Part shown: in pieces, positions 11,181 through 11,519 of the stretch
Position numbering within the stretch: the first letter of the stretch is position 1
Layout: each line of letters begins with the position of its first letter
NCBI RefSeq assembly: GCF_006345805.1
Contig: NC_043014.1
Location: 51,956,001 to 52,020,000, forward strand
Length of the DNA stretch: 64,000 nt
Reading direction: 5' to 3'
Source: Octopus sinensis
Lineage: Eukaryota
Notes under the pieces: generated by a model
Told to the model about the DNA's origin: nothing
What the model saw: only the letters and a program-made list of their open reading frames with translations
Database searches by the model: none
Translations under genes and position numbers: made by a program

Positions 11181-11296
11181 TACTAAACGCATTCTTTTTT
11201 CTTGTCTTTTTCAGGTGAGTACACGAGATCTTTATTTCTATCAAATCTTAAAGTTGCAAAAGGAAGATAAGTTCGCGAAATGCCGACAACGTGAGT
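11181..11296 (+). promoter_or_regulatory. Candidate recursive splice site with 76-nt cryptic exon
   Basis: TACTAAAC (11181-11188), 20 of 21 pyrimidines (11192-11212), CAG|GTGAGT at 11214/11215, second donor AAC|GTGAGT at 11290/11291. Confidence 0.5.
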
Positions 11297-11519
11297 ACAA
11301 ATCGATAGGTTACCCCTTCTTATCTCTCACCTTTACCATTCTAGAAATCAATACATATAACCATCAGATTGTCATATCAGATAGACACATCCTGTACGAA
11401 CTGGTTATCAAATCTGACAAATACGCTGAACCCACGCAAACAAAAGTACGCTACAGTAGATCACAGAGATAATCTTGATTGGGAAGAAGACGGTGGGGGT
11501 GGTGTTGATTGTGGTTCTG

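What the first reader, a model, noticed from the sequence alone, without database searches (positions are those of the whole stretch)
11181..11299. Candidate recursive splice site (CAG|GTGAGT) with a downstream donor defining a 76-nt RS-exon
Seen on +: branch-point-like TACTAAAC, no AG from 11165 to 11212, a 20/21 pyrimidine tract, and CAG directly followed by the consensus donor GTGAGT (11215). A second donor AAC|GTGAGT follows at 11291; both donors begin GTGAGTACA. Known: Drosophila ratchet points and vertebrate recursive sites have this AG|GT juxtaposition in very long introns and depend on a short cryptic exon closed by a downstream 5' splice site. Inference: the window lies in a giant + strand intron removed stepwise. 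I am not aware of this being characterised in cephalopods, but cannot check. Alternative: an ordinary 76-nt exon, since frame 0 is open (VSTRDLYFYQILKLQKEDKFAKCRQ), or a UTR exon.
Basis: partly seen in the sequence, partly recalled or inferred. Interest (0 to 1): 0.8.

Follow-up and report, generated by a model that had tools for sequence, protein, structure and literature searches.

The report
Candidate recursive splice site, untested
A textbook-quality "acceptor joined to donor" splice signal with a second donor 76 bases later really is in the sequence and is very unlikely to be chance, so it looks like a stepwise (recursive) intron-removal site, but nothing available here can show that it is transcribed or used.

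Summary
CAGGTGAGT alone is unremarkable: 28 of 100 shuffles contain one. The composite is not. On my rough splice-site matrices this is the best acceptor of 6,178 AG sites and the best donor of 7,296 GT sites in the window, at one junction. I expect about 0.002 such sites per window, and 0 of 100 shuffles matched. It meets every sequence-level feature published for fly and vertebrate recursive sites: TT at -5/-6, a very strong pyrimidine tract, a second donor under 100 nt downstream and a frame-breaking short exon. It is also the only exon-like unit in 64 kb.

What I could not test: transcription, strand, host gene, conservation, junction or lariat reads, and even the organism. The open frame 0 says nothing for coding. 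It runs 60 codons past the second donor and has no protein relatives.

My best reading is a recursive-type exon that is recognised and then removed (confidence about 0.4). The rivals are an expressed UTR, start-codon, poison or lncRNA exon (0.3), an unused pseudo-exon (0.2), and a donor-only or dual-use site (0.1). If real, it is a new member of a known kind. Interest is modest until RNA data exist.

The parts
11182..11189 (+). Branch-point-like TACTAAAC; the probable branch A at about 11187 lies 27 nt upstream of the AG
   Evidence: Read directly. TACTAA lies in -50..-15 of only 62 of 6,175 AG sites in the window, about 1%. It matches 6 of the 7 bases of the TACTAAC consensus (own knowledge). 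Use as a branch point is inferred.
11190..11212 (+). Polypyrimidine tract (21/23 Y; 20/21 over 11192-11212) inside an AG-free zone 11165-11212; TT at positions -5/-6 (11209-11210)
   Evidence: Only 6 of 6,175 AG sites have at least 21/23 Y upstream, and two of those lie in TTC-rich low-complexity sequence. On my heuristic PWM the acceptor ranks 1 of 6,178. TT at -5/-6 is found in 196 of 197 Drosophila ratchet points (bioRxiv 10.1101/006163).
11212..11220 (+). Tandem 3' splice site | 5' splice site, CAG|GTGAGT; the junction lies between 11214 and 11215 (the candidate ratchet point)
   Evidence: It is the only CAGGTGAGT in the window. The donor ranks 1 of 7,296 GT sites. It is the only one of 305 AG|GT junctions that is high on both the acceptor and the donor part. 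No match in 100 shuffles for tract plus AGGTRAGT.
11215..11290 (+). 76-nt candidate RS-exon: length 3n+1; TGA at 11216-11218 (frame 1); TAA at 11268-11270 (frame 2); ATG at 11280-11282 in frame 2
   Evidence: It is the top-scoring acceptor-donor pair with any open frame in the window, 15.8 against 8.8 for the next. The frame-0 peptide and its read-through ORF have no relatives in 5.8 billion proteins.
11258..11271 (+). Purine-rich stretch AAAAGGAAGATAAG inside the exon, a possible exonic splicing enhancer
   Evidence: Read from the sequence. The enhancer role is an inference from the general GAR-rich enhancer motif (own knowledge). It was not tested.
11288..11299 (+). Second donor AAC|GTGAGTACA, closing the 76-nt unit; the intronic 9-mer is identical to that of the first donor, and the exonic side (AAC) is weaker
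   Evidence: Heuristic score 3.5, rank 123 of 7,296, against 9.4 for CAG|GTGAGT. It is the only GTRAG within 220 nt downstream.

Best explanation
A functional recursive-type splice element on the + strand, working in four proposed steps.
1. The branch point, pyrimidine tract and CAG (11182-11214), together with the donor at 11291, let the spliceosome define a 76-nt exon.
2. An upstream exon outside the window is joined to 11215.
3. That junction regenerates a consensus donor, xxx|GTGAGTACA.
4. The regenerated donor then competes with the downstream donor AAC|GTGAGTACA. The two share the same intronic 9 bases, so the last three bases of the incoming exon decide the outcome.

With a normal ..AG exon end the regenerated donor wins. 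The 76 nt are then removed with the rest of the intron, giving a cryptic RS-exon, or 'zero-length' ratchet. If the 76 nt were kept, they would shift the frame or introduce a stop codon.

Shown here: the sequence anatomy and its rarity. Inferred: transcription, strand, order of the steps, and the outcome.
For: - The anatomy is confirmed.
- Best acceptor of 6,178 and best donor of 7,296 coincide at one junction.
- The composite is expected about 0.002 times per window and appears in 0 of 100 shuffles.
- TT at -5/-6 and an unusually strong 3' site match fly ratchet points (PMC6110457).
- A second donor under 100 nt downstream matches most fly recursive sites (PMC6224609). So does a short cryptic exon that is out of frame (PMC8605326); here 76 nt = 3n+1, with stops in two frames.
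- There is no other exon-like unit and no coding signal in the 64 kb. That fits a site deep in non-coding DNA.
- The region is single-copy in the window, with no transposon ends and no RNA-family or structure signal. It is therefore not a repeat by-product as far as the window can show.
Against: - There is no transcript, junction, lariat or conservation evidence of any kind.
- The host gene and even the organism are unknown.
- There is no strand asymmetry in base composition: AT skew -0.004, GC skew +0.005 after masking.
- The site sits in an ordinary repeat-free segment, rank 12 of 169.
- In humans 1.7-4.9% of annotated exons also regenerate a donor, so an expressed exon is at least as likely a priori.
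- In vertebrates only about 10 cryptic intronic sites are well supported.
- My splice-site matrices are approximations written from memory, not MaxEntScan and not trained on this species.
- The branch point and second donor were singled out after the fact.
Confidence: 0.4

Rival explanations
1. An ordinarily expressed exon whose first six bases happen to read GTGAGT, or whose regenerated donor is normally repressed, as the exon junction complex does in mammals. It could be a 5' UTR exon carrying the start codon ATG at 11280 (M-P-T..), an alternative or poison exon, or an exon of a non-coding RNA.
For: The strong acceptor, the downstream donor and the purine-rich stretch fit any real exon equally well. 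ATG at 11280 has a purine at -3 and an in-frame upstream stop at 11268. Putative RS-exons make up 1.7-4.9% of annotated human exons, and most are constitutively included (PMC6224609). By number, this class far outweighs cryptic intronic sites.
Against: There is no protein relative for the only open frame. That is a weak negative, because this genome seems absent from the database: its transposon proteins find at most 57-63% identity. The length is 3n+1 and two frames are closed, so it is not a frame-preserving coding cassette. A perfect CAG|GTGAGT at the start of an included exon would normally be selected against or need repression.
Confidence: 0.3
2. A non-functional pseudo-exon. Splice-like signals have arisen by chance in DNA that is untranscribed, transcribed from the other strand, or transcribed but ignored by the spliceosome.
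For: Nothing shows transcription, and there is no strand skew. If the scan covered a whole genome of about 2.7 Gb (my assumption), about 94 sites with tract at least 21/23 Y plus AG|GTRAGT are expected by chance. Other YAG|GTRAGT sites in the window look like chance, for example 20753 with 10/23 Y.
Against: The composite is expected 0.002 times per window, and about 1e-6 with the branch point and second donor, which is about 0.05 per 2.7 Gb. No shuffle matched. It is the extreme outlier among all 305 AG|GT junctions.
Confidence: 0.2
3. The site works mainly as a 5' splice site ending an upstream first or non-coding exon, for example one starting near the TATAAA at about 11069 or at the acceptor 11059 (exon 11060-11214). 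Alternatively it is a dual-specificity site, used as donor in some transcripts and as acceptor in others.
For: CAG|GTGAGT is the best donor in the window. The pairs 11060-11214 (155 nt) and 10708-11214 (507 nt) score well as exons ending at this donor.
Against: This reading leaves the exceptional pyrimidine tract, the AG-free zone, the TACTAA and the second donor 76 nt on as coincidences. Neither upstream unit has an open frame. There is no CpG or GC feature suggesting a promoter.
Confidence: 0.1

Closest known systems
Drosophila intronic ratchet points with cryptic RS-exons (Hatton 1998; Burnette 2005; Duff 2015; Joseph 2018/2021; Pai 2018)
   Same: It has a tandem acceptor|donor around AG|GT, a very strong pyrimidine tract with TT at -5/-6, and a second donor under 100 nt downstream. 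The enclosed exon is short and out of frame. It lies in a long stretch without exons.
   Different: The donor is GTGAGT, not the fly consensus GTAAGT. The organism is different and unverified. The defining evidence is missing: sawtooth RNA-seq profile, junction and lariat reads, and ultraconservation of the motif.
Vertebrate recursive sites with RS-exons and donor competition, the 'binary switch' (Sibley 2015), and annotated RS-exons repressed by the exon junction complex (Blazquez 2018)
   Same: The model is the same: exon definition by a downstream donor, then competition between the regenerated donor and the RS-exon donor. Inclusion of the exon would give a frameshift or premature stop.
   Different: Here the two donors have identical intronic 9-mers, so the outcome would depend entirely on the incoming exon's last bases. 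Whether the exon is cryptic or expressed is unknown. No host gene is known, whereas vertebrate sites lie in long neuronal genes.
Pseudo-exon acting as a zero-length exon or NMD exon in rat alpha-tropomyosin (Grellscheid and Smith 2006, own knowledge; a zero-length exon is noted in PMC5126111); poison exons
   Same: A short intronic unit with good splice sites, which is either removed through its own 5' end or included to give a nonsense transcript.
   Different: No expression data are available here.
Dual-specificity splice sites (AG|GT used alternatively as 3' or 5' site; own knowledge)
   Same: The CAG|GTRAG core is the same.
   Different: Those sites need no downstream exon-closing donor. 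Here a donor lies 76 nt on, which favours the RS-exon reading.

Membership tests
Recursive splice site (ratchet point) with cryptic RS-exon | Juxtaposed consensus 3' and 5' splice sites around a central AG|GT | tested here: met
   TTCTTTTTTCTTGTCTTTTTCAG|GTGAGT at 11192-11220. It is the top acceptor and the top donor of the window.
Recursive splice site (ratchet point) with cryptic RS-exon | Unusually strong pyrimidine tract, with TT at -5/-6 (99.5% of fly ratchet points) | tested here: met
   21/23 Y. T at 11209 and 11210. Only 6 of 6,175 AG sites are as pyrimidine-rich.
Recursive splice site (ratchet point) with cryptic RS-exon | A further 5' splice site a short way downstream (mostly under 100 nt) that defines the RS-exon | tested here: met
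   AAC|GTGAGTACA at 11291, 76 nt downstream, and the only GTRAG within 220 nt.
Recursive splice site (ratchet point) with cryptic RS-exon | The regenerated donor is stronger than the RS-exon donor | tested here: inconclusive
   The intronic parts are identical (GTGAGTACA). The exonic part of the RS-exon donor is weak (AAC; score 3.5 against 9.4 with CAG). The regenerated donor's exonic part comes from an upstream exon that is unknown.
Recursive splice site (ratchet point) with cryptic RS-exon | RS-exon content is non-coding or out of frame, so inclusion is disruptive | tested here: met
   76 nt = 3n+1, with stops in frames 1 and 2. No protein relatives. This is a weak discriminator, because random sequence usually behaves the same way.
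Recursive splice site (ratchet point) with cryptic RS-exon | Lies on the sense strand of a very long intron of an expressed gene | not testable with these tools
   No annotation or RNA data were reachable. The only indirect evidence is that there is no other exon-like unit in 64 kb and no strand skew.
Recursive splice site (ratchet point) with cryptic RS-exon | The AG|GT motif is conserved well above the flanking intron | not testable with these tools
   No orthologous DNA was found: exact-ORF look-ups, protein search and a metagenome scan were all empty.
Recursive splice site (ratchet point) with cryptic RS-exon | Splicing intermediates: sawtooth read density, upstream-exon-to-site junction reads, and lariats from the regenerated donor | not testable with these tools
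   No RNA-seq access.
Ordinary frame-preserving coding cassette exon | An open frame bounded by the splice sites, length 3n, and protein homology | tested here: not met
   Length is 76 nt. The single open frame is a stop-to-stop frame, 11176-11472, that runs through the donor. No homologues at E<=1.
Expressed (annotated-type) RS-exon or UTR exon | Presence of the 76 nt in mature transcripts | not testable with these tools
   No transcript data. ATG at 11280 with G at -3 is compatible with a start-codon exon.

The most novel reading that the evidence does not exclude
This is a working ratchet point with a cryptic RS-exon in a cephalopod or other lophotrochozoan giant intron. That would be the first documented case outside insects and vertebrates. 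It would show that exon-definition-based recursive splicing, down to TT at -5/-6 and a donor under 100 nt away, is shared across Bilateria. A further twist is that two donors with identical intronic 9-mers make the incoming exon's last bases the sole switch. No paper in the searched library links recursive splicing with octopus or molluscs. The one paper that holds both 'recursive splicing' and 'cephalopod' mentions each term once, and I did not open it.
Probability: 0.33. Interest if true: 0.55.

Novelty: new member of a known kind. Interest (0 to 1): 0.38.

Why it matters
Recursive splicing is documented in flies and vertebrates, and workers in the field describe its mechanism as unified across metazoans (PMC8605326). 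Its presence in lophotrochozoans has not been reported in the searchable literature.

Octopus has very long, neuron-enriched genes (PMC7222433). How its giant introns are removed accurately is therefore a fair open question.

A validated site would extend the known range of the mechanism. It would also provide a natural test of the donor-competition model, because the two donors share an identical intronic sequence.

As it stands, this is a single, very good motif-level candidate. It makes the question testable but does not answer it.

Tried and rejected
- **Coding exon in frame 0.** I searched the read-through ORF, which contains the exon's frame-0 peptide, against 5.8 billion proteins and got nothing. 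The frame is not bounded by the exon.
- **Recovering this locus or orthologues.** Exact-product look-ups for three window ORFs found nothing. A metagenome scan with a 23-mer across the junction found nothing.
- **Identifying the organism.** Transposon proteins from the window reach at most 57-63% identity in the database. The nearest contigs are unnamed ENA assemblies. The genome and its close relatives therefore seem to be absent, and the organism could not be confirmed.
- **Repeat or transposon origin.** 10700-11800 is single-copy in the window. There are no terminal inverted or direct repeats around the site. The repeat-free segment 10545-11528 is unremarkable in length, rank 12 of 169. Genome-wide copy number could not be checked.
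- **Structured or known RNA.** There are no Rfam hits in the whole window and no tRNAs. The fold of 11150-11330 is no better than its shuffles, z = +0.53.
- **Evidence of + strand transcription from composition.** There is no AT or GC skew after masking. CpG observed/expected is 0.95, with no island near the site.
- **Other exons of a host gene.** An acceptor-donor pair scan on both strands found no other convincing unit. Pfam on ten non-repetitive ORFs found only a reverse-transcriptase fragment.
- **A regular series of ratchet points.** The + strand YAG|GTGAGT sites at 11215, 20753 and 30203 are about 9.5 kb apart. However, 20753 has a poor tract (10/23 Y) and 30203 lacks a downstream donor, so I reject the series as a pattern.

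Full report
**1. The observation**

Reading 10800-11700 on the + strand and checking by script confirm every element.
- TACTAAAC is at 11182-11189.
- The last upstream AG ends at 11164, so 11165-11212 is free of AG.
- The tract 11192-11212 is 20/21 pyrimidine, and 11190-11212 is 21/23.
- CAG is at 11212-11214, directly followed by GTGAGT at 11215-11220.
- A second donor, AAC|GTGAGTACA, starts at 11291, leaving 76 nt (11215-11290) between the two.
- GTGAGTACA occurs only at these two places in the window. 0.5 copies are expected, and 6 of 100 shuffles have two or more.
- Frame 0 of the 76 nt is open (VSTRDLYFYQILKLQKEDKFAKCRQ). Frame 1 has TGA at 11216 and frame 2 has TAA at 11268.

One point needs correcting. 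The open frame is not delimited by the exon. It is a stop-to-stop frame, 11176-11472, that continues 60 codons beyond the second donor. Its openness therefore says nothing about coding.

**2. Is it more than chance?**

The 9-mer alone is not: CAGGTGAGT is expected 0.33 times, and 28 of 100 shuffles contain one. YAGGTRAGT occurs 4 times against 1.6 expected.

The composite is a different matter.
- I scored all sites with approximate metazoan splice-site matrices. These were written from memory and are a heuristic, not MaxEntScan. The acceptor at 11214 ranks 1st of 6,178 AG sites on both strands, and the donor at 11215 ranks 1st of 7,296 GT sites.
- I then scored only the non-overlapping parts: the tract plus -3 for the acceptor, and +3..+6 for the donor. 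This junction is the only one of 305 AG|GT junctions that is high on both. Independence predicts 0.0005-0.01 such sites per window.
- A matrix-free count agrees. Only 6 of 6,175 AG sites have at least 21/23 pyrimidines upstream, and two of those lie in TTC-rich low-complexity sequence. Only 0.75% of GT sites continue RAGT. The expectation is 0.002 per window.
- The tool's own dinucleotide shuffles gave no match in 100 for a 21-nt pyrimidine tract plus AGGTRAGT with up to 2 mismatches.
- TACTAA lies in -50..-15 of only 1% of AG sites, and a GTRAGT lies 30-150 nt downstream of only 5% of positions. Multiplying these in gives about 1e-6 per window.
- For a genome of about 2.7 Gb (my assumption), that means about 94 chance sites with the core composite and about 0.05 with all features. 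The last two features were chosen after seeing the site, so the true figure lies somewhere between.

I conclude that this is very probably a selected splicing signal, not noise. If the scan covered a whole genome, chance cannot be dismissed.

**3. Surroundings**

- The window is AT-rich (33% GC). About 15% of it is (TA)n/(CA)n-type tandem repeat, which produces nearly all of the long 'ORFs'.
- 10700-11800 is single-copy in the window. The repeat-free segment holding the site, 10545-11528, is ordinary in length, rank 12 of 169. A cluster of interspersed-repeat copies lies just upstream, at 9980-10544.
- There are no terminal repeats around the site, no Rfam family or tRNA in the window, and no significant RNA structure (z = +0.53).
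- A scan of all acceptor-donor pairs on both strands finds no other convincing exon. The 76-nt unit scores 15.8 and the next unit with any open frame scores 8.8.
- Pfam on ten non-repetitive ORFs finds only a reverse-transcriptase fragment, on the - strand at 62.4-62.8 kb. A mariner-type transposase tail lies beside it.
- So the unit is isolated: at least 11 kb of non-exonic DNA lies upstream and 52 kb downstream. That fits a deep-intronic site, but equally a lone UTR or lncRNA exon, or intergenic DNA.
- Base composition gives no hint of the transcribed strand, and there is no CpG island nearby.

**4. Attempts to bring in outside evidence**

- The frame-0 peptide with its read-through has no relative among 5.8 billion proteins.
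- Exact-product look-ups of three window ORFs found nothing.
- A junction-spanning 23-mer is absent from the metagenome collection.
- Transposon proteins of the window reach only 57-63% identity in the database, and the nearest contigs are unnamed ENA assemblies.

This genome and its near relatives are therefore effectively absent from what I can search. The negative protein result is weak.

**5. Comparison with what defines recursive splicing**

Published features are as follows.
- Tandem acceptor|donor.
- 3' sites stronger than ordinary ones (PMC6110457).
- A cryptic RS-exon of about 50 nt, closed by a downstream donor that is generally weaker than the regenerated donor.
- An ultraconserved motif, and location in long introns (PMC8605326).
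- Most fly sites have a further donor under 100 nt downstream (PMC6224609).

This site meets all the sequence-level items. T is at 11209 and 11210, the acceptor is top-ranked, a donor lies at +76, the length is 3n+1 and two frames contain stops.

The donor-strength comparison is inconclusive. The two donors share the same nine intronic bases. The RS-exon donor has a weak exonic side (AAC; 3.5 against 9.4 with CAG). The exonic side of the regenerated donor would come from an unknown upstream exon.

The functional items could not be tested: sense strand of a long intron, conservation, sawtooth profile, junction reads and lariat reads.

**6. Mechanism proposed, and rivals**

Most likely (confidence 0.4): exon definition across 11182-11299 brings an upstream exon to 11215. 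The regenerated xxx|GTGAGTACA then outcompetes AAC|GTGAGTACA, and the 76 nt leave with the downstream intron. If they were kept, the transcript would be frame-shifted or stopped.

Rivals:
- **(a) An expressed exon (0.3).** It could be a 5' UTR exon carrying ATG 11280 (G at -3, in-frame stop upstream), a poison or alternative exon, or a lncRNA exon. Its GTGAGT start would be incidental or repressed. By number this class is large: 1.7-4.9% of annotated human exons regenerate a donor.
- **(b) A chance pseudo-exon that is never used (0.2).**
- **(c) Mainly a donor for an upstream first or non-coding exon, or a dual-specificity site (0.1).** This would leave the exceptional tract and the second donor unexplained.

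Readings (a) and the main one share the same first step. The joint probability that 11214 is a real, used acceptor is about 0.7.

**7. Novelty and verdict**

Only one paper in the library holds both 'recursive splicing' and 'cephalopod', with a single occurrence of each term, and I did not read it. No paper links recursive splicing with octopus or mollusc. Long neuronal genes are documented in Octopus bimaculoides (PMC7222433).

If validated, this would be a new member of a known kind in an unsampled branch of animals. It would also be a neat natural test of donor competition. It would not be a new mechanism, and specialists already expect the process to be general in metazoans.

As a single motif-level candidate without RNA evidence, it earns moderate interest. 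The decisive data are annotation context, total or nascent RNA-seq, and alignment with related species. All of these are straightforward to obtain outside this tool set.

Noticed in passing
window 28660-28682 (+) and 28810-28840 (+): A second AG|GT tandem lies on the same strand: tcttCAG|GTAATGAG|GTAAGGAG. The acceptor is at 28666, followed by an 8-nt unit and then a good donor, GAG|GTAAGG, at 28675. The window's second-best acceptor (cgtctttttcag|GTTTTA, 28831) lies 165 nt further on. This could be a microexon or a second weak recursive-type site, or it could be chance.
   Followed up: partly
window 30200-30208 (+), 20750-20758 (+), 18585-18593 (-): These are the other YAG|GTRAGT matches. 30203 has a 165-nt AG-free zone and 16/23 Y, but no downstream GTRAG within 220 nt. 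20753 has a poor tract (10/23 Y). The three + strand sites are about 9.5 kb apart, which I judge to be coincidence.
   Followed up: yes
window 62456-63282 (-) and 63329-63646 (-): A reverse-transcriptase (RVT_1) fragment, apparently interrupted by a low-complexity or repeat insertion, lies next to the C-terminal part of a mariner/SETMAR-type transposase. Best database identities are only 57-63%, so the source genome seems absent from the protein collection.
   Followed up: partly
window 778-1150, 21430-21590, 27341-27748, 53291-53483; cluster 9980-10544: There are copies of interspersed, SINE-like repeats, 78-90% similar and in both orientations. One cluster ends about 650 nt upstream of the candidate site. 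ARAGORN found no tRNA gene and Rfam found no family.
   Followed up: partly
whole window, e.g. 3400-3520, 7900-9130, 25290-25650, 46400-46940, 56060-56620: Dense (TA)n, (CA)n and mixed microsatellites are present (TRF: 250 arrays, 9.3 kb). They generate nearly all ORFs of 90 aa or more in the six-frame list. None of these should be read as genes.
   Followed up: yes
window 11460-12075: A low-complexity block lies just downstream of the candidate exon. It has a G-rich run, then (GAT)n reading as poly-Asp on the + strand, then a repeat reading as poly-Ser on the - strand. No function is suggested.
   Followed up: no
window 11280-11282 (+): An ATG lies 11 nt before the second donor. It is in the frame that has an upstream stop, and it has G at -3. 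If the 76 nt are an expressed exon, this could be the start codon (M-P-T..).
   Followed up: partly
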